64,000 nucleotides of DNA from the IMG/VR virus record IMGVR_UViG_3300041402_000314, positions 62,001 through 126,000 of that record, one strand, 5' to 3'. Shown in pieces: positions 20,864-37,595 of the stretch (position 1 is its first letter; each line of letters starts with the position of its first letter). The notes below the pieces were generated by a model. That model was not told where the DNA came from. It searched no databases and saw only the letters and a program-made list of their open reading frames with translations. A program made the position numbers and the translations under genes.

Positions 20864-20893
20864 ATGTTAATTAAAAAGTTGAGGAGAACAACT

Positions 20894-22735
20894 ATGAATA
20901 CTGAAAGGATCGAAGAACTAGAAAGAGAAATAGAAAAACACAATCATTTATATTGGGAGAAAAATGAACCTATCATAAATGATGAAAGTTATGATGTATT
21001 ACTCCAAGAGCTACTGACAATATACCCAGATAGTCATATCTTCACTACCTTAGAGGAACAGAAATCTATCGAACCCCAAAATAAGTATGTACATTCAGAC
21101 CCTATGCTGTCCCTTGAGAAATTCTATAGCGTAAAAGAAGTCATTACATGGATGAAGAAGATAGGTAGATCACCCCACGAACTCTTCAAAATGGAACTCA
21201 AACTCGATGGTATTTCTGGTCGCCTAGAGAATGGTAATCTTGCGACTAGGGGAGATGGTCGAGTCGGTGAGAATCATACATCTAAAATTCCTTTCATAGA
21301 ATTCAAGGTAGCTTCAGATAAAACAATCTGTGAAACTGTTGATTGTACTATCAATGGTGAGATCATTATAACGGATAAGTTCTTTGAAGATAATCTTAAG
21401 GGAGAATTCAAGAATTCGAGAAATGCTGTTGCTGGTCTGATGGGTAGAAAGCGTCCTGAAGAGATCGAAGGAATGGGAGTTACTTTCGTTGATTTTGATT
21501 ATGATAAAATCCAACATACAGGAAATGTCGATGCCTTTGAAATCGGATGGGATGATCTGGTAAAAAATCTTACTTCAAAGGGATTTCCTTTTGATGGTAT
21601 CGTAATCAAATTGGCTGATACTGACTACTACAAGCTGTTGGGCAATAAAACCAAAAGTCCTAGAGGTGCTATAGCGTTTAAGTTCGCTAATAAGAAGGGA
21701 ATTACCCCTGCTACAGAGATTACAGCCCAAGTAAGTAGGAAGGGTAAGCTTACTCCTGTTGCCGAACTAGAGCCTATTGAGTTGGCTGGTGTTACGATAT
21801 CCAGAGCTACGTGTCATAATTTTAAGTTCGTTAAGGACATGGGCATAGGAAAAGGTTCTGTTGTTGTAATTGAAAGAGCAGGAGATGTGATACCAAAAAT
21901 CACGAGCGTTGTCAAAGGTAAAATTGATGATGTTATATTCCCAACAAATTGTCCCTGTTGTGACACACCAACTGAATTTAATGGTGTAGACCTATGTTGC
22001 CCTAACACTACATGCCCAGACCGTCTGATAGAGCATCTGGCTTTCATGGCTAAAACCATTGGTATCGATGAGCTTGGCAGACCGACTGCCGAGAAAATAT
22101 ATAATTATTATGTGGAATCCACTCATAATAAAACAAATATTTTTAGATTAAATTCCATATCATATGAAGATATTCTTTCTTTAGAAGGGTATGGTGAGAA
22201 GAGTGCTAAGACACTTTATGGTAATATCCAGAACGCATTGAAAAATATCAATGAAATAGATTTTTTGGCTTCTTTTGGTATATCTGGATGGGGTAAGACT
22301 ATGGCAGACAAAGCCCTTACCAAAGCTGGTAGCCTAGATAATCTTCTCAAAATGAATAAAGAAGAATTGACTTCTATTGAAGGAATCGGAGAAATAATGG
22401 CCGAAAATCTAATAAATGGCGTTAAAGAACAATGTATACGATTAGTTCATGCTGATTATACTACCTTCATTGTCGAACCTACCAAAGAACACAATAACAT
22501 AGTAGATGGACAACACGAAAACATAGTAAAGTATACAATCTGTTTCACTGGTAAATTAGAAAATCCGAGGAAATTCTATGAAAATATTGCTAAAGAAAGA
22601 GGGATGAAACCTACTTCTTCTGTAAATAAAGACTTGAACATATTGATTACTGCTGATAAGAACAGCGTATCCAGTAAAATGAAAAAAGCTGAAAAATTAG
22701 GTATAGAGATTTTATCTTTAGAGGAATGGCTATAA
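20894..22735 (+). CDS. ligA: NAD-dependent DNA ligase
   Basis: HNHLY...D..YD, PMLSLEK, KLDG, TRGDGRVGE, RNAVAG, DGIVIK, AIAFKF, RAGDVIP, Zn finger, HhH, BRCT. Confidence 0.96.
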   Translation: MNTERIEELEREIEKHNHLYWEKNEPIINDESYDVLLQELLTIYPDSHIFTTLEEQKSIEPQNKYVHSDPMLSLEKFYSVKEVITWMKKIGRSPHELFKMELKLDGISGRLENGNLATRGDGRVGENHTSKIPFIEFKVASDKTICETVDCTINGEIIITDKFFEDNLKGEFKNSRNAVAGLMGRKRPEEIEGMGVTFVDFDYDKIQHTGNVDAFEIGWDDLVKNLTSKGFPFDGIVIKLADTDYYKLLGNKTKSPRGAIAFKFANKKGITPATEITAQVSRKGKLTPVAELEPIELAGVTISRATCHNFKFVKDMGIGKGSVVVIERAGDVIPKITSVVKGKIDDVIFPTNCPCCDTPTEFNGVDLCCPNTTCPDRLIEHLAFMAKTIGIDELGRPTAEKIYNYYVESTHNKTNIFRLNSISYEDILSLEGYGEKSAKTLYGNIQNALKNINEIDFLASFGISGWGKTMADKALTKAGSLDNLLKMNKEELTSIEGIGEIMAENLINGVKEQCIRLVHADYTTFIVEPTKEHNNIVDGQHENIVKYTICFTGKLENPRKFYENIAKERGMKPTSSVNKDLNILITADKNSVSSKMKKAEKLGIEILSLEEWL

Positions 22736-24108: not shown

Positions 24109-24678
24109 GTTGATATTAAATAATAAAGGAGAGTTTATTATGTACGCTGAAAATGAAGAATGTATCGAAGCGTTGGATAAGCTATTAGAAGAAGAAAAGT
24201 TAGCCGTACTATTTGATGAAGCGGTTAATCTCGATTTAAGAAATAAGATAGCGAATATTCTTTTTAATGCTGGAGTTAAACCAACGTATTCTCATGGTAT
24301 CTGCGGAAGCTCAACATGCGGATATGGTATGTTGGATGAGTATGGATATTGGCAATTTCCAGTATCAAAACAATTATTTGAGGAGAAATAAAAATGAAAT
24401 TTACGACAGAATTGAACGATAATAAAGCGAAAAGCAGTGAAGGTCGCTGGCGGAAATGTTGCGGAACTCATGCTAAAGGTCTCAATACAATAGAAAATGA
24501 TAATGCGCCAACGACATATCAGATTTATTGTAAGGAGTGTAATACTACTACCGCACCATATGAGACAACCCAAGAAGCGAGTTATGCTTGGAATAATAAA
24601 ATTCTGATGTAACGAATATGCTTGACAAATAAAATCAGTTTTGATACAATGTATTTGTAAGTGAGAAAAGGAGATGGA

Positions 24679-25245
24679 ATGAGAAACAACGAAATTATTA
24701 AAAAGGCTATTGAGTTTGCTAGGAAATTCCATGAAGGTCAACCATATTCGGATGTTTATGGCTATATAAGGCATCTTGAAATGGTCTATGATGTTCTGGT
24801 TAGGTTTGGCTTCAGGGAAGTAGTTATACTGGCCTCTTCTTGGTTACATGATATTATAGAAGATACTATAGTTTCTTATCAGACTGTTAAAATAGAATTT
24901 GGATTTGATATTGCTGAAGCGGTCTATGGTGTTACTGATGAACTTGGTAGGAACAGGAAAGAGAGGAAAGCTAAGACCTATCCTAAGATAAGGGCGAATA
25001 TAAACTCTCTTATACTCAAGTTGGCTGATCGGATAGCTAATGTAGAGTTCGGTGCTAGTGGTGTATTCGGAGACCCATCTAAAACAAAGATGTATCGGAA
25101 GGAGCAAGCTGAGTTCGAGGAAGCATTAGGATTTAATGAACTATCTGAGAAATTCAGTAAAGGTGCTTATGATAGTGAGGAAGAAAAAGAAGTGGATAAA
25201 AAGATTTTAGCAATGTGGTTACATTTGAGAGAACTACTAAAATAA
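24679..25245 (+). CDS. Stand-alone RelA/SpoT-type HD hydrolase (small alarmone hydrolase-like)
   Basis: FA..FHEGQ.Y...YIRHL..V, WLHDIIEDT, VTD, KLADRIAN; promoter TTGACA 24622 / TACAAT 24645. Confidence 0.85.
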   Translation: MRNNEIIKKAIEFARKFHEGQPYSDVYGYIRHLEMVYDVLVRFGFREVVILASSWLHDIIEDTIVSYQTVKIEFGFDIAEAVYGVTDELGRNRKERKAKTYPKIRANINSLILKLADRIANVEFGASGVFGDPSKTKMYRKEQAEFEEALGFNELSEKFSKGAYDSEEEKEVDKKILAMWLHLRELLK

Positions 25246-25857: not shown

Positions 25858-26655
25858 ATGAATAGAAGAGTTGAACTACTACTGATCGACCCACAGAATG
25901 ATTTCTGTGATAAAAATGGGAGTCTGTTTGTACCCGGAGCTGATGAAGATTCTCTCCGACTGGCAACCATGATCGAGAGGATAAAGAATAAAATTTATAA
26001 TATCCATGTTACCCTCGATACCCACCACTATCTGGATATAGCTCATCCGATGTTCTGGACGAACTCAGAGGGCAGTCATCCACAACCATTTACGCTAATA
26101 TCCAAGCAGGATATCGCTGATGGGACATGGAGAACTACCAATCCTGCGGAACAGGATTACGGTAAGCAGTATATCGAAACTCTTGAAGCAAACAATCGTT
26201 ATCTGCTTTGTATCTGGCCTCCGCACTGCCTAATCGGTACATGGGGTCATAATGTGGTAGAACCTGTTGCAAATGCCGTTATGGAATGGGAAAAACGCTA
26301 TAGGTTCGTAGATTACGTTACAAAGGGTAGTAACTATAAGACTGAACATTATAGTGCTGTTCAGGCCGAAGTACCTGACCCTGAAGACCCATCTACACTG
26401 ATCAATACACCGTTTATCGAGACGCTTGAAGAAGCAGATATAATCGGTATATCTGGACAAGCTCTTAGCCATTGTGTAGCGAATACGGTAACGGATATCG
26501 CTGATCAATTCGGTGACGATAATATCAAGAAGCTTGTGCTGCTTGAGGATACCACATCTCCAGTACCTACTTTCGAGGGTCTTGGAGAAGATTTCCTCAA
26601 GGATATGAAGGCGAGAGGTATGCAGGTAGCGAGGTCAACAGACTTTTTAGCATAA
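25858..26655 (+). CDS. pncA: Nicotinamidase/isochorismatase-family hydrolase
   Basis: IDPQNDFC, L.VPGA, DTH, H, WPPHC, KG, SHCV. Confidence 0.85.
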   Translation: MNRRVELLLIDPQNDFCDKNGSLFVPGADEDSLRLATMIERIKNKIYNIHVTLDTHHYLDIAHPMFWTNSEGSHPQPFTLISKQDIADGTWRTTNPAEQDYGKQYIETLEANNRYLLCIWPPHCLIGTWGHNVVEPVANAVMEWEKRYRFVDYVTKGSNYKTEHYSAVQAEVPDPEDPSTLINTPFIETLEEADIIGISGQALSHCVANTVTDIADQFGDDNIKKLVLLEDTTSPVPTFEGLGEDFLKDMKARGMQVARSTDFLA

Positions 26656-26664
26656 ACAGTTTAT

Positions 26665-26781
26665 GGGAGAGTGGCGAAATTGGTAAACGCATCCTTATTA
26701 GGTCTGATACTCTTGCTGATAAGTTAGGACTGAACAGGATGGTGAGCAAGCACTTTGTAGGTTCGATTCCTACCTCTCCCA
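26665..26781 (+). tRNA. tRNA-Leu(UAG)-like gene with ~31-nt insertion in the anticodon loop; CCA not encoded
   Basis: Acceptor GGGAGAG/CTCTCCC + A73; Leu-type D arm GGCGAAATTGGTAAACGC; long variable arm; T arm GTAGG-TTCGATT-CCTAC; ATCCT/AGGAT encloses 40 nt. Confidence 0.7.
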
Positions 26782-26796
26782 ACATAATTTAAGTTT

Positions 26797-26902
26797 GGTA
26801 GGTAGGGCGATAATCGGAGAAAACTCTTTAATGATATTCGCCCCTGATTGAAGGTTTGAGAGTGAGCGGTTTAAATGACCTATCCGATTGCCCTACACTA
26901 TC
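26797..26902 (+). ncRNA. Putative ~105-nt structured RNA downstream of the tRNA
   Basis: Closing stem GGTAG-GTAGGGC-AATCGGA / TCCGATT-GCCCTAC-CTATC; GC-richer than surroundings; no ORF. Confidence 0.5.
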
Positions 26903-26943
26903 GATTAAAAAGAATAAAATAAAAGAATAGAGGAGGTAATAAA

Positions 26944-27321
26944 GTGAAAAGATTAATTAGTATAGTAATATTGTTGTTTTTATGTGTAGGATGTACCGAT
27001 GCTGACGTTGCATCAAGGAATTTGGCTAAGTCTGCTGACATGTTTGAGTTAGAGCGTAGGATAGTTTTTTATGATGCCATCCAAGGTGTCTATCTGCTGT
27101 CAATAGAGGGAAGATGTTCAATAGAAGTTAGGACAGCAAAGCTATCAGTGACATGTAAAACAAGTGAGACTGGTTATAAGAAGCACCATCTTGGATTATC
27201 GGATAATGTCACCTTCTTTTCGGAGCAGTTAAAATCGGCAAATGTTGGCGTTTACAATTATCGAGTAATTTTTAAGCCTGAAGTTTTAATCCCGAATATA
27301 GACTTAGAAACAAGCAGATAA
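26944..27321 (+). CDS. Conserved phage lipoprotein
   Basis: Lipobox CVGC after a signal peptide; ADVASRNL..SADMFE.RRIVFY...EGRCS...YKKH.LGLSDNVT. Confidence 0.8.
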   Translation: MKRLISIVILLFLCVGCTDADVASRNLAKSADMFELERRIVFYDAIQGVYLLSIEGRCSIEVRTAKLSVTCKTSETGYKKHHLGLSDNVTFFSEQLKSANVGVYNYRVIFKPEVLIPNIDLETSR

Positions 27322-27363
27322 CTTACGACCCTTAATAAAATAAAAGAATAATGGAGGTGTATC

Positions 27364-28092
27364 ATGAATGAAGACATGGATTTTAACATACCAATAGTCG
27401 GTGGTGGAGCATTTAATTTCTCTGCTACTAAGCCTGAGGTTTTAGGTGCGACAGAATATACGATTGTAACTCTTGTTGTGGACATATCAGGAAGTGTAAT
27501 ACCGTTTTCGAATGAACTGCTTGAGACAGTAAAGAGTGTAGTCACCGCCTGTCAAAAGAGTCCGAGAGCAGAAAATTTACTTTTCAGATTAATATCGTTT
27601 AATGATACTGTGATGGAGGTTCATGGATTTGTTCAATTGAATGGAATCAAAGCGGATGATTATCAAGCCCTCCAGTGTGGCGGAAGAACTGCTTTGTTTG
27701 ATGCGGTTCATGAGGCCATAGGCGCAACAATTTCGTATGGTCAAAGATTGATCGATCAAGATTTTGACGCGAACGCAATTGTATTCGTAGTTACTGACGG
27801 GCTAGATTGGGGTTCTACTATGACACCAAGAACTATCAAAGACCTTGTTGATAAGGCGGTGATCGGGGAACAATTGGAAAGTCTGACCACAATTCTTGTT
27901 GGTGTAAACGCAGATGATTGTGAGGATGCATTGGAGAGGTTTGTGAAGGAAGCTAACCTTTCACAATTCATAAACATAGGAGATGTGACACCACAGAAAT
28001 TGGCTAAATTGGCTCAGTTTGTTTCGAAGTCAATTTCATCAACATCACAGTCTCTCGGCACTGGCGGAGCAAGTCAGCAACTAATCTTTTAA
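27364..28092 (+). CDS. vWA (TerY-like) domain protein
   Basis: MIDAS DISGS, GGRTALFDA, VVTDG, ILVGV. Confidence 0.88.
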   Translation: MNEDMDFNIPIVGGGAFNFSATKPEVLGATEYTIVTLVVDISGSVIPFSNELLETVKSVVTACQKSPRAENLLFRLISFNDTVMEVHGFVQLNGIKADDYQALQCGGRTALFDAVHEAIGATISYGQRLIDQDFDANAIVFVVTDGLDWGSTMTPRTIKDLVDKAVIGEQLESLTTILVGVNADDCEDALERFVKEANLSQFINIGDVTPQKLAKLAQFVSKSISSTSQSLGTGGASQQLIF

Positions 28093-28102
28093 TCTTCCAT
28101 TC

Positions 28103-28135
28103 AAAAATGGGAGGGCTTCGGCTCTCCCATTTTTT
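28103..28135 (+). terminator. Intrinsic (possibly bidirectional) terminator
   Basis: AAAAATGGGAGGGC-TTCG-GCTCTCCCATTTTT. Confidence 0.85.
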
Positions 28136-28137
28136 CC

Positions 28138-28166
28138 TTGACTTCCTATCTTCCTTTTGTTATAAT
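28138..28166 (+). promoter_or_regulatory. Sigma70-type promoter for the pncB-like operon
   Basis: TTGACT-N17-TATAAT. Confidence 0.75.
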
Positions 28167-28197
28167 GTGTTCATAATCTAATAAAGGAGATAAACCA

Positions 28198-29604
28198 ATG
28201 AAAGAATTTTTACTTTTAAAAAATGACTATTATCAGTTAAGCATGTGTGTGGCCTATATTTTATTAGACCAAGCAAATCAAAAAGCAGGGTTCGAGGGTT
28301 TTGTCCGTAGAATCAATTCCAAAATCAATCCAGACCAAGATTTATATTACTTCGGTGGTAATAAAGAGGCTAACGAGCTTCTGGAAACTGCTAAAACCGA
28401 GATTCAAGACCCTGAATTTCTGGAGACCTTTATATCATTAGTCGAGACTAAACTTCCTGAAGATAAGAGAGACCTCTATATACGTCTCATAAGAGATAAA
28501 TGGGAATATCTGGATAAGGATTTTCATTATACTGTCTATCCTGAGAACGCCAAATTGTTTCCATATGTTCCTGCTGTACAATTCTATGGCGCAAAATGGA
28601 TAGGTCAACTTCTGGAAACTCCATTAATAAATACAATCAATGGTAAAACTGGTTTCAATACTTTAGATCGTCTGGATGGTTTTGATAGTGAAGAAGAGAA
28701 AGATTATTTAAAAACTATCATGGGCGGAAATTTCCAGAATAATAATTCATACTTCAATACGTATAGACAAGAATTATCTATACGAGCTAAAGAATATAGA
28801 GATTCTACCAGCAAGATGTTATTTGAAGCTGGTTATAGACGAGCATGTGGATTTGATGCTTCTTGGTTAGCTACTCAAATAGCTTTAACTGAAGGATGGG
28901 ATGGTACTAGCAATACCTCCATCATGTTCGACAATCGTACATGGACAGATTATACTACTGAAGAAAAGCGACTCGTTAAGATAGGTGGAACCATAGCACA
29001 TAGTTTTATAATGAGCCATCCGACTCAATTAGAAGCCCTCTTCAATTGGAATTTAATATATCCAAATAGCACCATATTATCATGTACTTATGATGTCATG
29101 GAATGTTTGGAACTGATGATAAAATATAACATCAAACCAGCAATGGTTCGTATTGATGTGAATCCATTGGCTGATTTAGCTAGACAGGTTAGGGATAGGT
29201 TAGATTCTGTCGGGTGGTCTGATGTTAAAATATTCCTATCTGGTGACTTAACTCCAGAGAAATTGAGAAAATTTGAAGAAGATGGAGTACCCTTCGATGC
29301 ATGTATGGCGGGAACCTCTTATGTTAACGTAGGCGGAACTGATAAGGTCAATGCTGAATTTGTCTATAAGCTGGTTGAATTCGAGAAGGATGGGAAGACT
29401 TTTTATCCTGAGAAGAAAGCCAATGGGAAGGATAGTAAGGCTGGATTGAAATATGTAGAATATAGTAAATATAGAAAGACTTTAGATGTGACCTCCCATA
29501 AAACAGAAAATGTTATGGATTTTGAAATAAAAAAGACATGGATGGGTTTTTGGGGTCTTACTGAAAATAACGAAATAGAAGAAGTGAGGTTTATAAATGA
29601 TTAA
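28198..29604 (+). CDS. pncB: Nicotinate phosphoribosyltransferase-like (divergent PncB)
   Basis: LLKNDYYQLSM, QLLET..IN, FEAGYRRA, GTSN, GTIAHSFI, TYD, VRID, SGDL, VYKLVE. Confidence 0.8.
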   Translation: MKEFLLLKNDYYQLSMCVAYILLDQANQKAGFEGFVRRINSKINPDQDLYYFGGNKEANELLETAKTEIQDPEFLETFISLVETKLPEDKRDLYIRLIRDKWEYLDKDFHYTVYPENAKLFPYVPAVQFYGAKWIGQLLETPLINTINGKTGFNTLDRLDGFDSEEEKDYLKTIMGGNFQNNNSYFNTYRQELSIRAKEYRDSTSKMLFEAGYRRACGFDASWLATQIALTEGWDGTSNTSIMFDNRTWTDYTTEEKRLVKIGGTIAHSFIMSHPTQLEALFNWNLIYPNSTILSCTYDVMECLELMIKYNIKPAMVRIDVNPLADLARQVRDRLDSVGWSDVKIFLSGDLTPEKLRKFEEDGVPFDACMAGTSYVNVGGTDKVNAEFVYKLVEFEKDGKTFYPEKKANGKDSKAGLKYVEYSKYRKTLDVTSHKTENVMDFEIKKTWMGFWGLTENNEIEEVRFIND

Positions 29605-30445
29605 AAATATCGATAGTTTTATGACCATAGGCAATTCCCATGAGGTATGTGAAGATTATATCTATTCCTCTTTCGGAGTAGACCCTTATATTATTCTGTC
29701 AGATGGTTGTTCCAGTTCCAATAATACTGATGTGGGAGCAAGGGTTCTAGTTCACTCAGCAAGGAACATATTGAATCGGTTCATATATAAAACTGGTATG
29801 CCTATTAATGCCGATACAATGGGTGATATGATAGCAAATGAAGCAGATGAGACAATCAAGAAAATGGGATTGAATACTTCGGCTCTGGATGCTACTCTAA
29901 TCATAGCATATCGACTCAAAAATAAGATCGTAATCAATGTCTTCGGTGATGGTAATGTCATATTAAAGAAGAAAGACGGAACCACGAAAATATATAATTA
30001 CCAGTATGCCAATAATATGCCTTATTATCTATCTTACTATGTCGATGCTGGAAGGCAGAACCAATATTGTAGGGAGATGTTCGATGTTGATGAAGGCGGT
30101 AAGACCATGACCACAAATCTTCTTCGTCTTAATAATGACCCTGCCTTGAGGGATTATCATGAATATTCTCATGAAGATTTTGTTAAGATACCCACTTTCG
30201 TTCTTCCTATCGAAGAATATGCAATGATAGGTATAGCATCTGATGGAATAGAGTCTTTCGGTAATCCTGTTAGTGGCCTTAGAAAAGACCATTATGTTGT
30301 ATTGGAGGAGCTAACAGCCTTTAAAGGGACTGTTGGAGAGTTCCTTAAGAGAAGGTGCAAGAGAGCTATCAAGAACTATAAGAAAGAAGGGATAGAGCAT
30401 TATGATGATGTGTCTATCGGAGTAATGTTGATAGGAGATGAATGA
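29597..30445 (+). CDS. PP2C-like protein phosphatase
   Basis: GNSHEVCEDY, SDGCSS, ATL, GDG, SDGI, DDVS. Confidence 0.85.
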   Translation: MIKNIDSFMTIGNSHEVCEDYIYSSFGVDPYIILSDGCSSSNNTDVGARVLVHSARNILNRFIYKTGMPINADTMGDMIANEADETIKKMGLNTSALDATLIIAYRLKNKIVINVFGDGNVILKKKDGTTKIYNYQYANNMPYYLSYYVDAGRQNQYCREMFDVDEGGKTMTTNLLRLNNDPALRDYHEYSHEDFVKIPTFVLPIEEYAMIGIASDGIESFGNPVSGLRKDHYVVLEELTAFKGTVGEFLKRRCKRAIKNYKKEGIEHYDDVSIGVMLIGDE

Positions 30446-30614
30446 TGGATATACCAATAACTGATATATTTAAAAAGATTAGTTCTAAAGACAAACGTTT
30501 AGAAATATATTATGATATAGCATCTGAGAGAGTTATAATTAGACATGATAATGCTGCATGGAACTATCCTACCTTTGAAGAGGCTATTGCTGGATTAATA
30601 GGGAGTTATATTAA

Positions 30615-31136
30615 ATGAAAATAATATTTCTTGATATAGACGGTGTTCTGAACCACCAACGATTTTACAAAGAGAGGTTTGAAGCCAGAAAGCAAGATAA
30701 ATTGGATGGTAATCTCGTCAAAAAGTCTCAGATTGATCGTGAAGCAGAAGAGATAGACCCTGAATCTGTCGAAAATTTGAATGAACTTATTGAGAATACT
30801 GGAGCTAAAGTTGTTATTAGTTCTACATGGAGATTGGGTACAGAGATCGAAACACTTCAAGCCATTCTCGAAAAACGAGGATTTGTTGGAGAGGTTATAG
30901 GTAAAACCCCTGTAGGTTGTGGTTGTTGTCAAAGAGGAAATGAAATTCATAAATGGTTAGGTGATAATCGCGATATCATAGATGAAGAAGGTAATAATTA
31001 TATAATTCTCGATGATGATAGTGATATGCTCTACTGGCAACGAAATAATTTTATAAACGTAGATCAATATGTTGGATTAACACCTAAACAGGTTTATAAA
31101 GCTACGAGATTTTTAACAGGTATAGGTCAATTGTGA
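30615..31136 (+). CDS. HAD phosphatase (Swiss-army-knife RNA-repair type)
   Basis: IFLDIDGVLN, VISSTWR, RGNEI..WL, YIILDDDSDM, GLT. Confidence 0.85.
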   Translation: MKIIFLDIDGVLNHQRFYKERFEARKQDKLDGNLVKKSQIDREAEEIDPESVENLNELIENTGAKVVISSTWRLGTEIETLQAILEKRGFVGEVIGKTPVGCGCCQRGNEIHKWLGDNRDIIDEEGNNYIILDDDSDMLYWQRNNFINVDQYVGLTPKQVYKATRFLTGIGQL

Positions 31137-31558
31137 AAGAGAATAAATTTAGGGTATGGGATACTTTTACTAAAAAGATGGTCTTTGAAGGATTTAATGT
31201 CATAGGAGAAGTAACATGCTTTAATGGTATTGAACAATATGGAGATGAACATCCTAATCCTGCATATGAATCATCATTGATGCGACTTAATGATTTCATT
31301 CTCATGCAATTTACTGGTCTTGCGGATAAAAACGGTAAAGACTTATATGAAAATGACTTGGTAATACACAAACATGATTTATCCGTATATCAGGTGATCT
31401 GGGTAGATGAAGAAGCTAAATTCATACTCAATTTAGTAAAGGGAAATGGTAATGATAGTATTGATGAAGATTTAAGTCCGTTGAATCTATCGCTATTTAC
31501 GATTATAGGAAATATATATGAGAAACCTGAATGGTTGGAGATAGAAAATGAAAGGTAG
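31133..31558 (+). CDS. YopX-family protein
   Basis: KFRVWD, MQFTGLADKNGKDLYENDLV, IIGNIYE.PE. Confidence 0.9.
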   Translation: MKENKFRVWDTFTKKMVFEGFNVIGEVTCFNGIEQYGDEHPNPAYESSLMRLNDFILMQFTGLADKNGKDLYENDLVIHKHDLSVYQVIWVDEEAKFILNLVKGNGNDSIDEDLSPLNLSLFTIIGNIYEKPEWLEIENER

Positions 31559-32177
31559 AATTTATAAAATACCACTATTGGAAAGGTTCACCTCTGTTAA
31601 TAGAGCATGTTTTACTTTTAGTCGTTGTAGGCCGATGACCGTAGATTCAATAGGTCTTTATGTGTATTATGATGATGAAAAGGATATTACAGTTAGTAAT
31701 GTTCGTCAGTCGCTAATAGGCGTTAAAGATACTCGTGTTATAGTAGTGGCGAAAAATGTAAATGAAGCTCTCGATAAATTTTATGATGAGTGGGATGGTG
31801 CTAAAGTAGGCGGTGATTTCATAGATTCTAAGGCACTATGGGTCAATCCTAATAGAAATATAGTTGAATATCCTAGCTGTAGTCTGTTAAACATAAACAG
31901 TAAAGATGAGCGTATTTGTGGGAAAGAAATAACGATGGGTGAAGACGAATATGCTCATAATTGTGGCGAATTTGGTTGGTGTACTTTAGATGGATATGAT
32001 AGCGATATGGATTGTCCTGTAGAAGCATGTAGTGGGTTTAATTATGAACTTAAACCCACGATAAAGACATGTAATCATAAAACAGGTATTTTTAAATATG
32101 AGTCATGTGATATGTTTTTAGATTGGAGTAAGAAATTTTTTAGCTCTACAGAAAACGTAAATTTAGAGGACTGAAAA

Positions 32178-33860
32178 ATGGCTAAATATACAGTAAGAGG
32201 AAAGGGAGAAACGACCTTAACCGATAGAAATTTCATCACTGAAGGCGGTGAGGGGAAAGTCTATGGGAAAGGCTCTACTATATACAAAATATATAGCGAT
32301 ATCAATAAGATGATACCAGAAGCCAAGATAAAGGAACTCGAAGTATTGACTTCGCCCAATATAATGAATCCTCAGAATGTCATACTAGATCAGAAATCTC
32401 GTATGGTTGGATTCACTATGGATAGGATAGACAACTCTCTGCCTATATGTAAACTGTTTACTACTGACTTCAGGAATAGAAATAATATAACGCCTGAGAT
32501 CATAGTCGATCTTGTAGATAATATACAAGAGACATTGAATTCCATACACGAAAAGAAAATAATATGCGTGGATTTAAACGAATTAAATTATCTGGTCAAG
32601 GAAAACGACTTTAAGACACCTTATTTTATAGATGTCGATTCGTACCAGACACCTAATTTTCCTGCTACTGCGATAATGCCTAACATAAGGGATTATAATA
32701 CGAATGGATTTAATCGCTTGACAGACTGGTATAGTTTCGCTATAATAGCTTTTCAGTTGTTCATTGGCATACATCCTTTTAAAGGTAAGAATCCTAATTT
32801 CAAGAAGAATAGCCTCATAGAGCGCATGAAACAGAATGTTAGTGTCTTTGATAAGGATACGAGGGTTCCTGCCTCTACAAGGGATTTTAGCCACATTCCT
32901 AGCCATTATATGGCGTGGTTCGAAAGGCTATTCCAGAAAGGTGAGAGATTAGAGCCACCTTCTATAGCTGGACTGCTTAATGTAATGCAGGTTCAAACAG
33001 AAATAATAGATAGTACGGATAACTTTATAATAAAATTTCTCCGAGACTATAAGAATCCTGTTACCAGTTATTTCAATTTTAGTGGTACTGATGGAACCAC
33101 CACTACGAAGGAAGGTTATATAGGCAAGGTAGGATATGATATCGATAACGCCAATTCGGTTCTGGTATTCGGTGAAAAATTCCTTACACCAATAATAGCG
33201 ACTGTAACGGATGAAAAATTAGTCTTGACAAACCTGAAGACAAATGTTATAATCCCTAATGTATTCATAAACGCTAAGAAAATAACTAAGGTAGGGAATA
33301 AGTTATTTGTATATCAGGGCGAGAAGTTCTTGGAAGTAGGTATAGTTGAAATGAATGGTAAGGTACTGGCGAACGTAGCTAAGACCTACAATGTTATGCC
33401 TAACTCCACTCAGGTATTTGATGGGTTCCTTTATAGCACTATGTTGGAGAAACCATATCTGATGATACCTCAGAATGGTAATTTCGTTCCTGTTCCAGTA
33501 AAAGAGCTGGAGAAATACAAGATCATAGACGGTAAATTTGAGAACGGTGTCTGTGTGATAACAGCATATAAAGATGGTGGCTATGATCGGTTTACCTTTG
33601 TCTTCGAGGGAGTTAATTATACCTTCAGGAAAGATGAGGATGTAGCTGGAAAATCGGTTAACTTCACTGTTCTAAGCAATGGAATAGTCGTTAGTATAAC
33701 TGATGATGGAACTATGGAGATATTTAAGAATGATAGTAGCCATAATAAGATGAAGGTTATACATGACCCTGCTATCAGTTCCGATATGAAACTCTGTAAT
33801 AACGGCCTCGAAGTATTATTCTATCGAGGCAATGAAATGTACTCTTTAAAGATGAAGTGA
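32178..33860 (+). CDS. Ser/Thr protein kinase-like protein with a beta-rich C-terminal domain
   Basis: GGEGKVY, IYKIY, DLNELNYLV, IDVDSYQ, TDWYSFA...GIHPFKG. Confidence 0.88.
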   Translation: MAKYTVRGKGETTLTDRNFITEGGEGKVYGKGSTIYKIYSDINKMIPEAKIKELEVLTSPNIMNPQNVILDQKSRMVGFTMDRIDNSLPICKLFTTDFRNRNNITPEIIVDLVDNIQETLNSIHEKKIICVDLNELNYLVKENDFKTPYFIDVDSYQTPNFPATAIMPNIRDYNTNGFNRLTDWYSFAIIAFQLFIGIHPFKGKNPNFKKNSLIERMKQNVSVFDKDTRVPASTRDFSHIPSHYMAWFERLFQKGERLEPPSIAGLLNVMQVQTEIIDSTDNFIIKFLRDYKNPVTSYFNFSGTDGTTTTKEGYIGKVGYDIDNANSVLVFGEKFLTPIIATVTDEKLVLTNLKTNVIIPNVFINAKKITKVGNKLFVYQGEKFLEVGIVEMNGKVLANVAKTYNVMPNSTQVFDGFLYSTMLEKPYLMIPQNGNFVPVPVKELEKYKIIDGKFENGVCVITAYKDGGYDRFTFVFEGVNYTFRKDEDVAGKSVNFTVLSNGIVVSITDDGTMEIFKNDSSHNKMKVIHDPAISSDMKLCNNGLEVLFYRGNEMYSLKMK

Positions 33861-35188
33861 GGTATTGAAAATGGAAAAGCCATATATTGAAGAAAAAGTT
33901 ATAACCACACTTAGAAAGTATAATCCAGATTATGGTGATGATAGAATATGTATGTGCGGTCATCCCTACTATCGACATTTTGATAGCTATGAAGATATGT
34001 ATCCTCGCGGTTGTAAGTATTGTGGTTGTTTTACTTTTAAAGAAGAAAATCCGAATGAATGGCGAAAATCTTCTATTCGTCCTACAAAAGCTGGATATTA
34101 CGAAACGAAATGTATATACGATTCAAAAGATCACATATATGAAAGATTCTACAATAGAAAAACAGATAGGTGGGGAACTAGAAATTTTCCCTACCAGCCT
34201 ACTTACTGGAGACCAATCGCGTGACACCATATTTAATAATTTTTACAACAGCATTTATCCAGATATTTTTTGTATCTTTACAGACAATACAGATTGCTAG
34301 GGTTGATACTATGGAGTATGCAGCAACTAGAATATTCGTGGTAAGTATTTGTATTGCACTAGCATGGCTTTATAATATAAATAAAGGCGTAAAGGATTGC
34401 CGTCTAACAAAATTTATTTATATTATGGGTACATCAACTGGTGCTGTTTGTGGAGCTAAAGTAAACGCTATAATTGGAGCGATAATATGAAAAAGGAAAA
34501 TATTCAAACCCCTGCTGATTTCGAAGAATATTATGGTAGTCTGCCGAGTGTGGAAACAAAATGGAAGAAGGTGGATATCGTAAAGGAAGAATTTGATATC
34601 ATGGATTTGATGGGCGCAACGGTGGTCTATCACGGAAATACCAGTGAGGATAAATCTATAGGTATGGTGGGAACTCACGAGAGAGAAATGGTCATAGTTT
34701 GGAAAGATAATTGTGAGGATACCATTATAGATTCCGATCATGGTAGACAAGTTCTTAAGGAAAGTAGAATATTTCCGATATAAGGGGAGAAAATGGATAA
34801 TAGAATTTTTAACGTAAACGGCAAGGGTTGTGAAGATTTACAGGCTACATTAGAGCTTGTATTCAAACAATCGCGCATGACTTGTGATGGTTGGTCATTT
34901 AGTAGAAAGCATGGACTGATATTACATTGGTGTGATGGAGATGCCGTAAATAAACTCCCTTCATCTATAAAGTCCGAAGACGCTACAAAACTCGTGTGGT
35001 CGTGGCTACAGACTGATGAAGCTGGAACTGTTGAACAGGAGCATTGGGATAGTAATTATCAACATGATGGACATAATGGGACAGGATGGAGAGTCTACTG
35101 TGAAGATTGGGGTCATGCGAATAATGATTGGGGTGCTATTTGCGCTATAAAACCAGTCTATCTATGGTATGGTAAATAAGGAGAAGTC

Positions 35189-35647
35189 ATGGAGCAGAAA
35201 TACGAAAGTCCTGATGTTAATATTAGGGAAAAAAGTGTTACGTATAAAGAATACAAGAATCCGTCTGTAGCTGTAGACATAATCATAATAAATGAAGATG
35301 GGAGAATAGTTCTGATCGAAAGAAAGAATCCGCCTTATGGTTGGGCATTACCCGGAGGATTTGTTGATTGTGGTGAAACACTTATGAATGCTGCTATCAG
35401 GGAAGCTAAAGAGGAAACATGTGTCGATGTTAAAATATTGGAAAGTTTGGGTGTATACGATGACCCTAAAAGAGACCCTAGACAACATGTAATTTCTGCT
35501 GTTTTCATAGCAACCGCTTTTAATCAGACACCAAAAGCTGCGGATGACGCAAAGAATCTTAAGATATATTCTTTAGATGATTTACCAGAATTGGCTTTCG
35601 ATCATACTAAAATTTTAGATGACTTTATGGGATGGGCTAAAAACTAA
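35189..35647 (+). CDS. Nudix hydrolase (ADP-ribose pyrophosphatase-like)
   Basis: [26 protein letters not shown] Nudix box; RDPR; LAFDH. Confidence 0.92.
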
Positions 35648-36511: not shown

Positions 36512-37135
36512 ATGCTTAGAATAGGCTTGACTGGAAATATGGGTTCTGGGAAGGATACGGTAGCCCAAATACTCTCTAAAAAGAAAGGATTCATAGAATC
36601 CAATTCTGATGATATCTGTAGATGGTTATGGGAGAATGATGAGGATATTCAAATAGCGGTCTCTGCTCTTTTCTGTGGTGCTACTGATAGAGCAACCATA
36701 GCTAAATTGGCTTTCGATAATGAAAAAAAGAGAAAGAAATTAGAACAGATTTTTCATCCCAGAGTCGATGGATTACATGCTTGTGATTTTTACATGCATT
36801 ATGATACCGAAGATTTCTTGATCGTCAATTCTCCTCTTCTTATAGAGACTGGTTATTATGAGAAGATGGATTTTGTAGTGGTTGTTGGTGCTGATAGAGA
36901 GACCTGTATCGAGCGAGTTCTGGAACGAAATAAGAATCTAAGTCGAGAAGACATAGAGAAAAGATTGGATATCCAGATGCCTTTAGAAAATATGTTTCCA
37001 TATGCTGATTATGTTGTGGAAAATTGCGGAACTAAAAAAGAGCTTGACAATGAAGTTGAAAAGTTGTATAATAGGCTTCTTGAACTTAAATCTTATGAGG
37101 TGACTAGCAGTGAAAGTAGCAATATATCCGGGTAG
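36512..37135 (+). CDS. coaE: Dephospho-CoA kinase
   Basis: IGLTGNMGSGKDT, DRA.IA...F, LEQIFHP, PLLIE, RL..QMP, AD.V.EN. Confidence 0.88.
   Translation: MLRIGLTGNMGSGKDTVAQILSKKKGFIESNSDDICRWLWENDEDIQIAVSALFCGATDRATIAKLAFDNEKKRKKLEQIFHPRVDGLHACDFYMHYDTEDFLIVNSPLLIETGYYEKMDFVVVVGADRETCIERVLERNKNLSREDIEKRLDIQMPLENMFPYADYVVENCGTKKELDNEVEKLYNRLLELKSYEVTSSESSNISG
37044..37072 (+). promoter_or_regulatory. Consensus sigma70 promoter inside the coaE 3' end
   Basis: TTGACA-N17-TATAAT with extended TG, ~40 nt before the coaD start. Confidence 0.7.
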
Positions 37136-37595
37136 TTTTAATCCCTTTCATAGAGGACATGTCGATGTAGTTAGACAAGCCTTAAAGCTATTCGATAAAG
37201 TGATCATAGCTAAAGGCTGTAATCCAGATAAGAATGAATACGTATTGCCTATATTAACCTTCTCCGATGAATTTGTTGGAAAAGAATTACATGGAATTAA
37301 AGATTTCTATGGAAAGGACTCTATGGAAGTGGATAAGTTTACTGGATTATTTACTGACTACATCGAGGAATTCAAAGACGGTATAAAATCTGAGGAATTA
37401 GATGTCCAATTAGCCGTCATCAAAGGTCTCAGGAACGGTCAAGACCTTGAATATGAGAAGAATCAACAATATTGGAATGAAGATTTGGGTATAGAGATTC
37501 CTTTCTTCTATATAATATCTGATAGAAAATATTGTCATATATCCAGTTCTGCTATAAGAGGATTGGAGAAATTTAAGGAGAATAAAGATGGGTGA
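37110..37595 (+). CDS. coaD: Phosphopantetheine adenylyltransferase
   Basis: AIYPGSFNPFHRGH, NPDK, KGLR...D.EYE, ISSSAIR. Confidence 0.88.
   Translation: MKVAIYPGSFNPFHRGHVDVVRQALKLFDKVIIAKGCNPDKNEYVLPILTFSDEFVGKELHGIKDFYGKDSMEVDKFTGLFTDYIEEFKDGIKSEELDVQLAVIKGLRNGQDLEYEKNQQYWNEDLGIEIPFFYIISDRKYCHISSSAIRGLEKFKENKDG

What the first reader, a model, noticed from the sequence alone, without database searches (positions are those of the whole stretch)
25858..35647. Deamidating NAD-salvage set (PncA + PncB-like + Nudix) in a phage that uses an NAD-dependent ligase
Seen: nicotinamidase, a PncB-type PRTase (DYYQLSM, GTIAHS motifs rather than NAMPT-type) and an ADPR-type Nudix within 10 kb, plus LigA. 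Known: Thoeris, DSR and SIR2-type defences cleave NAD to nicotinamide and ADPR; phage NARP1 (Adps/Namat) and NARP2 (Nampt/Nmnat) rebuild it. Inference: a different, Preiss-Handler-type reconstitution route. NadD and NadE are not visible here and would come from the host or elsewhere in the genome.
Basis: partly seen in the sequence, partly recalled or inferred. Interest (0 to 1): 0.62.

Follow-up and report, generated by a model that had tools for sequence, protein, structure and literature searches.

The report
Phage-encoded deamidating NAD salvage pathway
This 204-kb uncultured myovirus carries all four enzymes that turn nicotinamide back into NAD+ through nicotinic acid, and its nicotinamidase belongs to a widespread vWA–phosphatase–kinase operon found in both bacteria and large phages that I found described nowhere in the paper library I searched.

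Summary
The genes sit at the stated coordinates:
- 25858-26655: a nicotinamidase with its catalytic and metal residues intact.
- 28198-29604: a divergent nicotinate phosphoribosyltransferase (NAPRT), not NAMPT or Namat.
- 35189-35647: a NadM/NrtR-type Nudix.
- 20864-22735: LigA.

The phage therefore encodes the full route Nam→NA→NaMN→NaAD→NAD+. It has no Prs/Adps-like gene, no NAMPT, and no Macro or SIR2 domain.

The nicotinamidase is the first gene of a conserved, co-directional operon: nicotinamidase, TerY-like vWA, PP2C, then a Ser/Thr kinase with a β-propeller, often with a Nudix alongside.
- I confirmed the nicotinamidase gene at ≥565 loci in bacterial and archaeal genomes and 118 loci in viral contigs. 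Neighbours were scored in the best 80 and 79 of these.
- In the window, the NAPRT-like gene and several small genes are inserted into this operon.
- Of 37 large phage records with the module, 22 carry a NAPRTase-family gene and 21 carry NadE. All 10 PRTases I classified were PncB-type.

Preiss-Handler genes in jumbo phages were already reported from sequence analysis (Li et al. 2024). I call this a new variant of a known kind. A role against NADase defences is plausible but untested.

The parts
20864..22735 (+). NAD-dependent DNA ligase LigA (623 aa), an NAD+ consumer of the phage
   Evidence: PF01653 at 1.1e-23, PF03120 at 1.8e-25, plus HHH_2 and BRCT. 71% identical in sister contig L008.
25858..26655 (+). 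Nicotinamidase (PncA-like, 265 aa, P0002), first gene of the conserved module. Predicted reaction: nicotinamide to nicotinate plus NH3.
   Evidence: PDB phmmer hits Pnc1 at 6e-8 with D11, K156, C206 and D54, H56, H123 aligned to the catalytic and zinc residues. These residues are invariant in the family. The Foldseek top 10 are all nicotinamidases. More than 4500 homologues of about 263 aa were found.
27364..28092 (+). TerY-like vWA protein (242 aa) with an intact MIDAS motif (DxSxS...T...D) and a conserved Ser-rich C-terminal tail. Second gene of the module.
   Evidence: PF00092 at 2e-5. 51% identical to the gene that follows the nicotinamidase in a Desulfobacterales MAG. Directly downstream on the same strand in 44 of 54 cellular and 58 of 76 viral loci. 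D40, S44, T109 and D145 are invariant.
28109..28166 (+). Terminator-like hairpin (28109-28126) followed by a near-consensus sigma-70-like site (28138-28166, 11 of 12 with TG), just upstream of the NAPRT-like gene
   Evidence: Consensus scan only. Fits the NAPRT-like gene being a separately transcribed insertion. Not evidence of function.
28198..29604 (+). Divergent nicotinate phosphoribosyltransferase (NAPRT-like, 468 aa, P0001), inserted between the vWA and PP2C genes of the module. Predicted reaction: nicotinate plus PRPP to NaMN.
   Evidence: TIGR01513 at 1.6e-40, under its cut-off. PDB 2f7f at 4.5e-10 and 4yub at 3e-4. AF2 pLDDT 93. VIA Z 26-28 to PncB-type NAPRTs against ≤16 for Namat and NAMPT. 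H268, R214, R215, D320 and S348-G349-D350 are invariant in about 70 family members.
29597..30445 (+). PP2C-type phosphatase (282 aa), third gene of the module
   Evidence: PF13672 at 6.5e-13. 32% identical to the third gene of the Desulfobacterales operon. Present in 69 of 79 viral loci.
30615..31136 (+). HAD-family phosphatase (HAD_SAK_2, 173 aa), an intervening gene with no assigned role
   Evidence: PF18143 at 9e-31. The same Pfam family also lies near NAPRT-like genes in L008, L009 and L010, but in only 1 of 79 viral and 0 of 80 cellular module loci.
32178..33860 (+). Ser/Thr protein kinase (about residues 20-250) fused to a C-terminal β-propeller-like domain (560 aa). Fourth gene of the module.
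   Evidence: PF00069 at 33.7 bits against a cut-off of 31.7. 38% identical over its full length to the fourth gene of the Desulfobacterales operon. Glycine loop, catalytic D/N and DxD motifs are visible in the sequence. The C-terminal part resembles Reg_prop propellers in Atlas models, TM 0.63-0.69.
35189..35647 (+). Nudix hydrolase (152 aa, P0003) of the NadM-Nudix/NrtR type. Predicted ADP-ribose pyrophosphatase (ADPR to AMP plus ribose-5-P).
   Evidence: PF00293 at 2.6e-25. NadM-Nudix at 5.9e-15 and NtrR at 1.3e-14. PDB 2yyh at 1.5e-34, and Francisella and Synechocystis NadM-Nudix 2qjt and 2qjo. Homologues lie beside the module in 22 of 54 cellular and 19 of 76 viral loci.

Best explanation
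The phage encodes a complete four-step deamidating NAD+ salvage pathway, and the window holds its first two steps.

The steps:
1. The nicotinamidase (25858-26655) converts nicotinamide, the base released when NAD+ is cleaved or used by LigA-independent NADases, into nicotinate.
2. The divergent NAPRT (28198-29604) joins nicotinate to host PRPP, giving NaMN.
3. A NadD-type adenylyltransferase (genome 23306-24283, minus strand) makes NaAD.
4. An NH3-dependent NadE (genome 20483-21394, minus strand) amidates NaAD to NAD+.

The Nudix (35189-35647) most likely splits ADP-ribose into AMP and ribose-5-phosphate. That returns the other half of cleaved NAD+ to the nucleotide and PRPP pools.

The nicotinamidase is not free-standing. 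It heads an ancient operon with a TerY-like vWA protein, a PP2C phosphatase and a Ser/Thr kinase with a β-propeller. I infer that a phosphorylation switch controls when or where nicotinamide is deamidated.

Shown by computation: gene identities, conserved catalytic residues, folds, presence of all four steps, absence of NARP1 and NARP2 parts, and recurrent co-occurrence with PncB and NadE in other large phages.

Inferred: enzyme activities, substrate choice, the regulatory role of the triad, and the purpose. I put about 0.4 on the main benefit being survival of NADase-type defences, about 0.4 on a general NAD+ supply for LigA and replication, and the rest on something else.
For: Gene identities.

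Structures:
- NAPRT-like model, pLDDT 93. PncB-type NAPRTs score Z 26-28 at rmsd 3.0-3.5 Å over about 350 residues. Namat scores 15.9 and NAMPTs ≤15.7.
- Nicotinamidase model, pLDDT 83. The top ten Foldseek hits are nicotinamidases.

Completeness of the pathway:
- NadE: TIGR00552 at 143 bits against a cut-off of 64.
- NadD: TIGR00482 at 104 bits against 112, and PF01467 at 59 bits against 21.
- No Prs, PF04095, Macro or SIR2 in the genome.

Comparative support that the NAPRT-like family works with a nicotinamidase and NadE:
- L009 has NadE, PncA, NadD, a metallophosphatase and a Nudix 4-7 kb from the NAPRT-like gene.
- The L006 record has PncA and NadE adjacent to each other.
- L012 has an isochorismatase-family gene directly upstream.
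- L004 has the 263-aa nicotinamidase directly downstream.

Module-bearing phages:
- Of 37 large records, 21 have NadE, 22 have a PF04095 gene and 19 have both (Fisher p = 2e-5).
- All 10 classified PRTases are PncB-type over curated cut-offs.
- PRTase and NadE are adjacent in at least six records.
- PncB lies within 10 kb of the nicotinamidase in 22 of 79 viral and 12 of 80 cellular loci.
- NadD or NadE sits inside the module in several phages.
Against: - No activity has been measured for any of these proteins.
- The NAPRT-like protein fails every curated cut-off and has no PF04095 hit at all, so its substrate could have drifted.
- NadD and NadE lie about 65 kb away on the other strand, not in one operon with the window genes.
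- The nicotinamidase family associates far more strongly with vWA, PP2C and kinase than with any NAD-synthesis gene. Many cellular loci have the module, or just nicotinamidase plus vWA, among housekeeping genes with no pncB nearby. Its primary role may therefore not be salvage.
- From general knowledge: nicotinamide inhibits SIR2-type NADases, so removing it could speed NAD+ loss. A route costing three ATP plus PRPP is also slow compared with NARP1 and NARP2.
- PRPP synthesis must come from the host.
Confidence: 0.65

Rival explanations
1. The nicotinamidase-vWA-PP2C-kinase(-Nudix) module is mainly a conflict or signalling system rather than a biosynthetic one. When triggered through the kinase/phosphatase switch, it destroys the two NAD+ cleavage products, nicotinamide and ADP-ribose, or ADPR-derived signals. 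In bacteria this would deny invading phages the substrates of NARP1 and NARP2. In phages it would act against competitors or tune host NADases. On this view, NAD+ resynthesis through NAPRT, NadD and NadE is a secondary add-on in some phages.
For: - The core operon is conserved without any NAD-synthesis gene in most cellular loci and many viral ones.
- It has the architecture of the TerY-P triad (vWA, PP2C, kinase). From general knowledge, that triad has been reported as an anti-phage system.
- A Nudix is a frequent neighbour.
- One phage has three Nudix genes directly upstream of the module.
Against: - No PADLOC model, TerY-P included, hits the vWA, PP2C or nicotinamidase.
- Two cellular loci sit among housekeeping genes rather than in defence islands.
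- 19 of 37 large module-bearing phages carry both PncB and NadE, often beside or inside the module. That pattern is what a salvage role predicts.
Confidence: 0.17
2. The gene at 28198-29604 is not a nicotinate PRTase. It has taken on another substrate. One possibility is nicotinamide or ADPR-PP, as in Namat. Another is a different base, which together with the nearby HAD phosphatase would yield a nucleoside-like product, as proposed for Ter-associated PRTase-HAD pairs.
For: - It is only 22-26% identical to characterised NAPRTs, falls below all curated cut-offs and has no PF04095 hit.
- It evolves faster than its neighbours: 62% identity to the L008 copy, against 80-95% for the flanking genes.
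- A HAD_SAK_2 gene recurs near family members in L008, L009 and L010.
Against: - All NAPRT signature positions are invariant in the family: the N-terminal D-Y-Q, the RR pair, the TSN motif, the His of GTxAHS and the SGD motif.
- Only NAPRT HMMs and NAPRT PDB sequences are hit.
- The global fold matches PncB and not Namat or NAMPT.
- There is no Adps/Prs-like partner in the genome.
- Family members sit next to nicotinamidases and NadE.
Confidence: 0.1
3. The three genes the reader picked are unrelated accessory genes that happen to lie within 10 kb in a gene-dense accessory region of a jumbo phage.
For: - Unrelated genes lie between them (an RDF-like gene, YopX, HAD and several small ORFs).
- NadD and NadE are far away.
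Against: - The order is conserved in related contigs.
- Genome-level co-occurrence of the nicotinamidase module with PncB and NadE is strong.
- All four pathway steps are present in one genome.
Confidence: 0.03

Closest known systems
Preiss-Handler gene clusters of 'NAD-jumbo phages' (Li et al. 2024, Microbiome, PMC11662467), for example Kuafu_71 pncB-nadD-nadE
   Same: A large phage encoding PncB-type, NadD and NadE steps so that NAD+ can be made from nicotinate. That paper also mentions phage pncA. It rests on sequence analysis only, like the present case.
   Different: - The pathway here is split between two loci about 65 kb apart.
- It begins with a nicotinamidase, so nicotinamide is the entry point.
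- The PRTase belongs to a divergent clade that standard Pfam and TIGR cut-offs miss.
- The nicotinamidase is embedded in a vWA-PP2C-kinase operon. That paper holds neither 'nicotinamidase' nor a description of such an operon in the passages I read.
NARP2 (phage Nampt + Nmnat; Osterman et al., bioRxiv 10.1101/2024.02.11.579819) and Vibrio phage KVP40 NadV/NatV
   Same: NAD+ is rebuilt from nicotinamide and PRPP by phage enzymes. KVP40 NatV and NadM-type enzymes also carry a Nudix domain related to P0003.
   Different: - NARP2 is a two-step amidated route through NMN. Here it is four steps through nicotinate, NaMN and NaAD, and it needs NadE.
- No NAMPT is present in the genome.
NARP1 (Adps + Namat)
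   Same: It uses the products of NAD+ cleavage. Namat is a type II PRTase of the same superfamily as P0001.
   Different: - No Prs-like Adps in the genome.
- P0001 matches PncB-type NAPRTs at Z 26-28 against 15.9 for Namat.
- ADP-ribose is predicted to be hydrolysed by the Nudix rather than pyrophosphorylated.
NARP3 (PnuC-like transporter + NadR-like enzyme; PMC13464706)
   Same: A phage-encoded route that restores NAD+.
   Different: NARP3 imports nicotinamide riboside. It involves no deamidation, PRTase or NadE.
Cellular PncA-PncB salvage (E. coli PncA/PncB, yeast Pnc1/Npt1) followed by NadD and NadE
   Same: The same four predicted reactions. The nicotinamidase catalytic and metal residues and the NAPRT signature residues are conserved.
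   Different: - The nicotinamidase has an insertion of about 55 residues (about 63-117) and belongs to a distinct 263-aa family under the Pfam cut-off.
- The NAPRT is a divergent clade found so far mainly on large, phage-like metagenomic contigs.
TerY-P triad (TerY-like vWA + PP2C phosphatase + Ser/Thr kinase), as I recall it from Anantharaman et al. 2012 and Gao et al. 2020; neither paper could be read here
   Same: The same three domain types, in one co-directional operon in the order vWA, PP2C, kinase.
   Different: - A nicotinamidase always precedes the triad.
- The kinase carries a β-propeller.
- No PADLOC model matches the vWA, the PP2C or the nicotinamidase, and the kinase has only weak hits to mad6, PD-T4-6 and MkoA kinase models, none of them TerY-P.
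- I found no paper linking the triad to a nicotinamidase in the held library.

Membership tests
Nicotinamidase (PncA/Pnc1) | Isochorismatase-like α/β fold closest to solved nicotinamidases | tested here: met
   AF2 model at pLDDT 83. Foldseek ranks 1-10 are all nicotinamidases (2wta at 2.7e-12; Pnc1 at TMt 0.76).
Nicotinamidase (PncA/Pnc1) | Catalytic Asp-Lys-Cys triad and Asp/His/His metal site | tested here: met
   D11, K156 and C206 align to Pnc1 D8, K122 and C167. D54, H56 and H123 align to D51, H53 and H94. All are invariant in 22 homologues.
Nicotinamidase (PncA/Pnc1) | Passes the curated family HMM cut-off (Pfam PF00857; NCBIfam NF008623) | tested here: not met
   PF00857 scores 20 bits against 27. 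NF008623 scores 25 against 174, with only the N-terminal 50 residues matched.
Nicotinamidase (PncA/Pnc1) | Hydrolyses nicotinamide to nicotinate | not testable with these tools
   Needs an enzyme assay.
Nicotinate phosphoribosyltransferase (NAPRT/PncB) | Type II PRTase fold with NAPRT domain arrangement, closer to NAPRT than to NAMPT, Namat or QAPRT | tested here: met
   VIA Z 26-28 at rmsd 3.0-3.5 Å over 340-360 residues to six PncB-type NAPRTs. Namat 15.9, NAMPT ≤15.7, QAPRT about 13. Foldseek E 8.6e-24 for NAPRT against about 1e-12 for NAMPT.
Nicotinate phosphoribosyltransferase (NAPRT/PncB) | Conserved His of the GTxAHS motif and PRPP/phosphate-binding signature residues | tested here: met
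   H268 aligns with the His of E. faecalis NAPRT and with human NAPRT H213. I recall that histidine as the phospho-histidine equivalent, from memory only. R214, R215, H268, D320 and S348-G349-D350 are invariant in 34 family members.
Nicotinate phosphoribosyltransferase (NAPRT/PncB) | Passes curated HMM cut-offs (TIGR01513/TIGR01514, PF04095) | tested here: not met
   TIGR01513 scores 139 bits against 297. There is no TIGR01514 hit and no PF04095 hit at E ≤1. Only PF17767 (the N-terminal domain) matches, at 28.5 against 32.6.
Nicotinate phosphoribosyltransferase (NAPRT/PncB) | Genomic association with nicotinamidase, NadD and NadE | tested here: met
   Own genome, L009, L006 record, L012, L004 and L008.
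Nicotinate phosphoribosyltransferase (NAPRT/PncB) | Prefers nicotinate over nicotinamide | not testable with these tools
   I did not map substrate-determining residues. Needs an assay.
NARP1 | Prs-like ADPR pyrophosphokinase (Adps) plus Nampt-like Namat | tested here: not met
   No PF13793 match in the 204-kb record. P0001 is structurally NAPRT-like and not Namat-like. The record is estimated 89% complete, so absence is not absolute.
NARP2 | NAMPT plus NMN adenylyltransferase | tested here: not met
   No PF04095 or NAMPT match in the genome. The adenylyltransferase present is NadD-type.
NAD synthetase NadE | Passes the curated model | tested here: met
   TIGR00552 scores 143.4 bits against 63.65, and PF02540 gives 1e-41. 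It is a 303-aa single-domain protein with no glutaminase domain.
NaMN adenylyltransferase NadD | Passes the curated model | tested here: inconclusive
   TIGR00482 scores 104.1 bits against 112.45, with full-length domain coverage over residues 131-323. PF01467 scores 58.9 against 21.
ADP-ribose pyrophosphatase (Nudix, NadM/NrtR clade) | Intact Nudix box, and nearest characterised relatives that bind or hydrolyse ADPR | tested here: met
   The Nudix box (Gx5Ex7REx2EE) can be read at residues 56-75. Best named hits are NadM-Nudix at 5.9e-15 and NtrR at 1.3e-14, and PDB 2qjt, 2qjo and 3gz8. Substrate was not tested.
TerY-P triad | vWA with MIDAS, PP2C and Ser/Thr kinase in one operon | tested here: met
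   Pfam hits. MIDAS residues are invariant. The co-directional order is conserved in 28 of 54 cellular and 67 of 76 viral loci.
TerY-P triad | Matches the TerY-P defence-system models | tested here: not met
   No PADLOC hit for the vWA or PP2C. The kinase has only weak hits to other kinase models.

The most novel reading that the evidence does not exclude
The nicotinamidase-vWA-PP2C-kinase(-Nudix) operon is a previously undescribed, phosphorylation-gated nicotinamide and ADP-ribose processing system at the centre of the NAD+ conflict. Bacteria, archaea and large phages share it. In phages it gates a four-step deamidating NAD+ reconstitution pathway, in effect a fourth NARP, which uses either a canonical PncB or, in this lineage, a fast-evolving divergent NAPRT.
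Probability: 0.3. Interest if true: 0.8.

Novelty: new variant of a known kind. Interest (0 to 1): 0.6.

Why it matters
NAD+ depletion is one of the commonest ways bacteria abort phage infection. Three phage NAD+ reconstitution pathways have been shown experimentally, and none goes through nicotinate.

This phage would add three things:
- A complete, phage-encoded nicotinamide→nicotinate→NaMN→NaAD→NAD+ route. It would be a fourth strategy, with different vulnerabilities: it needs PRPP, ammonia and three ATP, and it removes nicotinamide, which inhibits SIR2 enzymes.
- A regulated nicotinamidase. The enzyme is hard-wired to a vWA/PP2C/kinase switch at hundreds of bacterial and phage loci. That points to regulated destruction of nicotinamide as a widespread process I found unreported in the paper library I searched. 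It can be tested by cloning one four-gene operon.
- An annotation gap. The divergent NAPRT clade and the 263-aa nicotinamidase family both fall under standard annotation cut-offs, so surveys of phage NAD metabolism probably undercount this pathway.

Tried and rejected
- Megablast of the region against GenBank phages: no match.
- tblastn of P0001 against GenBank phages: only about 25% identical NAPRT-like hits.
- P0001 as a single query against IMG/VR: nothing. The family alignment found only four loci.
- tblastn of P0002 against GenBank phages: four uncultured records, three of them 462-595 kb, and no isolate.
- PADLOC scan of nine proteins from the region: nothing for the nicotinamidase, vWA, PP2C or NAPRT-like protein.
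- Complex prediction of nicotinamidase plus vWA: score 0.00, 'no answer'. It is not evidence either way.
- The 489-aa ORF between NMNAT and Nudix in L156 was tested as a hidden PRTase and rejected: hhalign probability 0.3%, no PDB hit.
- Own-genome searches for Macro and SIR2 domains: none.
- The Namat structure paper contains nothing on NAPRT substrate determinants, so I made no residue-level claim about carboxylate versus amide recognition.
- The 2012 Ter/TerY-P paper could not be fetched by DOI.
- Literature searches linking a nicotinamidase to TerY, PP2C, Thoeris or jumbo phages returned nothing relevant.
- I built no NAPRT/NAMPT/Namat tree, because no NAMPT or Namat sequences were available by reference. 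HMM, PDB-sequence and structure rankings were used instead.
- The large representative-protein search, the read-mapping tools and the RNA tools were not needed.

Full report
**Context.** The window is bases 62001-126000 of a single 204,149-bp IMG/VR virus record. The record is linear, CheckV estimates it 89% complete, and its GC is 35%. It is a tailed phage of myovirus type. PHROG hits include tail sheath, baseplate wedge, large terminase, family-B DNA polymerase, ribonucleotide reductase and helicase. Nearly all genes in the window are on the + strand. No close relative exists among GenBank phages.

**Checking the observation.**
- ORF 25858-26655 is under the Pfam isochorismatase cut-off (20 bits against 27). 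Against PDB sequences it hits only nicotinamidases. The alignment to yeast Pnc1 puts D11, K156 and C206 on the catalytic triad and D54, H56 and H123 on the zinc ligands. These six residues are invariant across 22 homologues.
- An AF2 model of it (pLDDT 83) returns nicotinamidases as its ten best Foldseek matches. It carries an insertion of roughly 55 residues compared with canonical PncA.
- ORF 28198-29604 has the quoted motifs. It matches only NAPRT models in NCBIfam (TIGR01513 at 1.6e-40, far below cut-off) and only NAPRTs in PDB by sequence.
- Its AF2 model (pLDDT 93) superposes on six PncB-type NAPRTs at Z 26-28 and rmsd 3.0-3.5 Å over about 350 residues. Namat reaches Z 15.9 and NAMPTs ≤15.7, with only partial or badly fitting alignments. 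Foldseek E-values agree.
- By sequence it leans towards the TIGR01513 (E. faecalis/human) subfamily, and by global superposition towards the E. coli/yeast PncB type. Both are NAPRTs, and I leave the subfamily open.
- The Nudix at 35189-35647 has an intact Nudix box. Its closest named relatives are the Nudix domains of NadM and of NrtR regulators, which are ADP-ribose-binding or -hydrolysing members.
- LigA is at 20864-22735.

**The rest of the pathway.** Both are in the phage genome.
- A single-domain NAD synthetase lies at genome 20483-21394 on the minus strand (TIGR00552, 143 bits against a cut-off of 64).
- A NadD-type adenylyltransferase domain lies in a 325-aa ORF at genome 23306-24283 on the minus strand (TIGR00482 at 104 bits against 112; PF01467 well over its cut-off).
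- The second cytidylyltransferase-like gene, in the window at 37110-37595, is CoaD-like and sits beside CoaE, so it belongs to CoA synthesis and not NAD synthesis.
- The genome has no Prs/Adps-like gene, no PF04095 NAMPT or canonical NAPRT, and no Macro or SIR2 domain.
- The phage therefore has one candidate enzyme for each of the four steps nicotinamide→nicotinate→NaMN→NaAD→NAD+. It lacks the defining parts of NARP1 and NARP2. NARP3 is a PnuC/NadR system.

- P0002 belongs to a very large and unusually well conserved family: more than 4500 proteins of about 263 aa, with 60-65% identity even to copies in bacterial and archaeal MAGs.
- In a Desulfobacterales MAG, its homologue heads a four-gene operon. 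These are the vWA protein 27364-28092 (51% identity), the PP2C phosphatase 29597-30445 (32%) and the 560-aa kinase 32178-33860 (38% over its full length).
- I then fetched 80 cellular and 79 viral loci around family members.
- Among loci with at least 5 kb downstream, the vWA gene follows directly on the same strand in 44 of 54 cellular and 58 of 76 viral loci.
- All three partners are present in 28 of 54 cellular and 67 of 76 viral loci. A Nudix related to P0003 is nearby in 22 of 54 and 19 of 76.
- Some bacteria have only the nicotinamidase-vWA pair, set among housekeeping genes.
- The vWA protein keeps its MIDAS residues and a Ser-rich C-terminal tail. The kinase keeps its catalytic motifs and carries a C-terminal domain resembling Reg_prop β-propellers.
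- This is the domain set of the TerY-P triad, but no PADLOC model matches it. I found no paper in the held library tying such a triad to a nicotinamidase.
- In the window, the operon is interrupted by an RDF-like/VG64-family gene, the NAPRT-like gene, a HAD phosphatase, YopX and small ORFs. The sister contig L008 has the same layout.

**Does the module connect to NAD+ synthesis?** Yes, and repeatedly.
- I searched 37 module-bearing IMG/VR records of ≥100 kb in full. NadE is present in 21 and a PF04095 PRTase in 22. Nineteen records have both and 13 have neither (Fisher p = 2e-5).
- Among the 20 records of ≥200 kb, 15 have NadE, 16 have a PRTase and 13 have both.
- All ten PRTases I classified pass the curated PncB models TIGR01514 and NF003704. 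None is NAMPT.
- PRTase and NadE are adjacent in at least six records.
- PncB lies within 10 kb of the nicotinamidase in 22 of 79 viral and 12 of 80 cellular loci.
- NadD or NadE sits between module genes in several phages.
- A 365-kb phage has glutamine-dependent NadE, an NMNAT-like gene and three Nudix genes immediately upstream of the module. NadD-type genes are less frequent, in 9 of 37 records.
- I could not build a matched control set of module-free large phages. Li et al. report a complete NAD pathway of any kind in 174 of 668 gut jumbo phages.

**The divergent NAPRT.**
- P0001's family has about 70 members at E <1e-60, mostly on large metagenomic contigs. Canonical NAPRTs follow only at E about 1e-10. 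Signature residues are invariant.
- Its genomic partners support nicotinate as the substrate. One contig has NadE, PncA, NadD, a metallophosphatase and a Nudix 4-7 kb away (L009). The 224-kb L006 record has PncA and NadE adjacent to each other. L012 has an isochorismatase-family gene directly upstream. L004 has the 263-aa nicotinamidase directly downstream.
- Some relatives have a NADAR-domain gene next to it, or the domain fused to it.
- In sister contig L008 the flanking genes are 80-95% identical to the window's, but the NAPRT-like gene is only 62% identical and the Nudix 68%. A terminator-like hairpin and a near-consensus promoter-like site precede the gene (consensus matches only). This fits a separately acquired or fast-evolving cassette.

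**Mechanism and purpose.**
- The best-supported reading is a complete phage-encoded deamidating salvage pathway. Its entry enzyme is under a vWA/PP2C/kinase phospho-switch, and a Nudix recycles ADP-ribose.
- The biochemical steps are inferred from homology, conserved residues, folds and gene association. None has been measured.
- Whether the benefit is survival of NADase defences or a general NAD+ supply cannot be decided here.
- Two points from general knowledge count against a simple counter-defence story. Nicotinamide inhibits SIR2-type NADases, so removing it could speed depletion. The route is also ATP-expensive and depends on host PRPP.
- A serious rival is that the module is itself a conflict system that destroys nicotinamide and ADPR. 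Its strong conservation without synthesis genes in bacteria supports this. The PncB/NadE co-occurrence in phages argues that, at least there, it feeds synthesis.
- A predicted nicotinamidase-vWA complex gave no answer.

**Novelty.**
- Preiss-Handler clusters (pncB-nadD-nadE) and pncA in jumbo phages were already reported from annotation (PMC11662467). The bare claim that a phage has a deamidating NAD route is therefore not new.
- I did not find three things in the library: experimental proof of such a route as an NAD+ reconstitution pathway, the divergent NAPRT clade, and the nicotinamidase-vWA-PP2C-kinase operon with its wide distribution.
- No cultured phage in GenBank carries the nicotinamidase family, so tests must use cloned genes.
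- I rate it a new variant of a known kind, interest 0.6.

Noticed in passing
window 36512-37135 and 37110-37595: An overlapping gene pair for dephospho-CoA kinase (CoaE, TIGR00152 over its cut-off) and a CoaD-like phosphopantetheine adenylyltransferase (TIGR01510, 96.8 bits against 103.3). These are the last two steps of CoA synthesis. The pair is conserved in sister contig L008.
   Followed up: partly
window 24661-25245: An HD_4 (RelA/SpoT-type HD hydrolase) domain protein just upstream of the nicotinamidase, 89% identical in L008, which has two such genes. It may be an alarmone or nucleotide phosphohydrolase.
   Followed up: no
window 26944-27321: This gene is filed by Pfam as Phage_VG64 and by PHROGs as a recombination directionality factor. 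Its N-terminus reads like a signal peptide ending in a Cys (lipobox-like), which fits poorly with an RDF. It sits between the nicotinamidase and its vWA partner.
   Followed up: no
window 28198-29604 against L008:10001-11350: The NAPRT-like gene is only 62% identical, and the Nudix 68%, between two phages whose flanking genes are 80-95% identical. This points to cassette exchange or fast evolution.
   Followed up: partly
window 32718-32746 and 33225-33253: Two perfect 12-of-12 sigma-70 consensus promoter-like sites lie inside the kinase gene on the + strand. A third lies at 37044-37072, inside CoaE just before the CoaD-like start. These are consensus matches only.
   Followed up: no
genome 23306-24283 (minus strand; L001:1408-2385) and L001:634-1113: The NadD domain occupies only residues about 125-324 of a 325-aa ORF with a TTG start. 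The N-terminal part has a weak MazG-like hit (6e-4), so it may be a fusion or an over-extended ORF. A CYTH-domain gene lies next to it.
   Followed up: no
P0072 and the P0017 locus: A NADAR (PF08719) domain is fused to one NAPRT-like family member (650 aa) and is encoded directly downstream of another. This is a further link between this PRTase clade and NAD/ADP-ribose metabolism.
   Followed up: no
IMG/VR records G010, G012, G016, G017, G018, G022, G028, G029, G033, G035, G039; L156:664-2754: Many module-bearing jumbo phages carry long NadE ORFs of about 630-730 aa. The one I examined is a CN_hydrolase plus NAD_synthase fusion, which is a glutamine-dependent NAD synthetase. The window's phage has the short ammonia-type enzyme instead.
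   Followed up: partly
L010 (240-kb contig): Around a distant NAPRT-like gene, the contig also encodes NAD kinase, glucose-6-phosphate dehydrogenase, 6-phosphogluconate dehydrogenase, T4-type RNA ligase, NusA and FtsH. That is an unusually broad metabolic set next to the PRTase.
   Followed up: no
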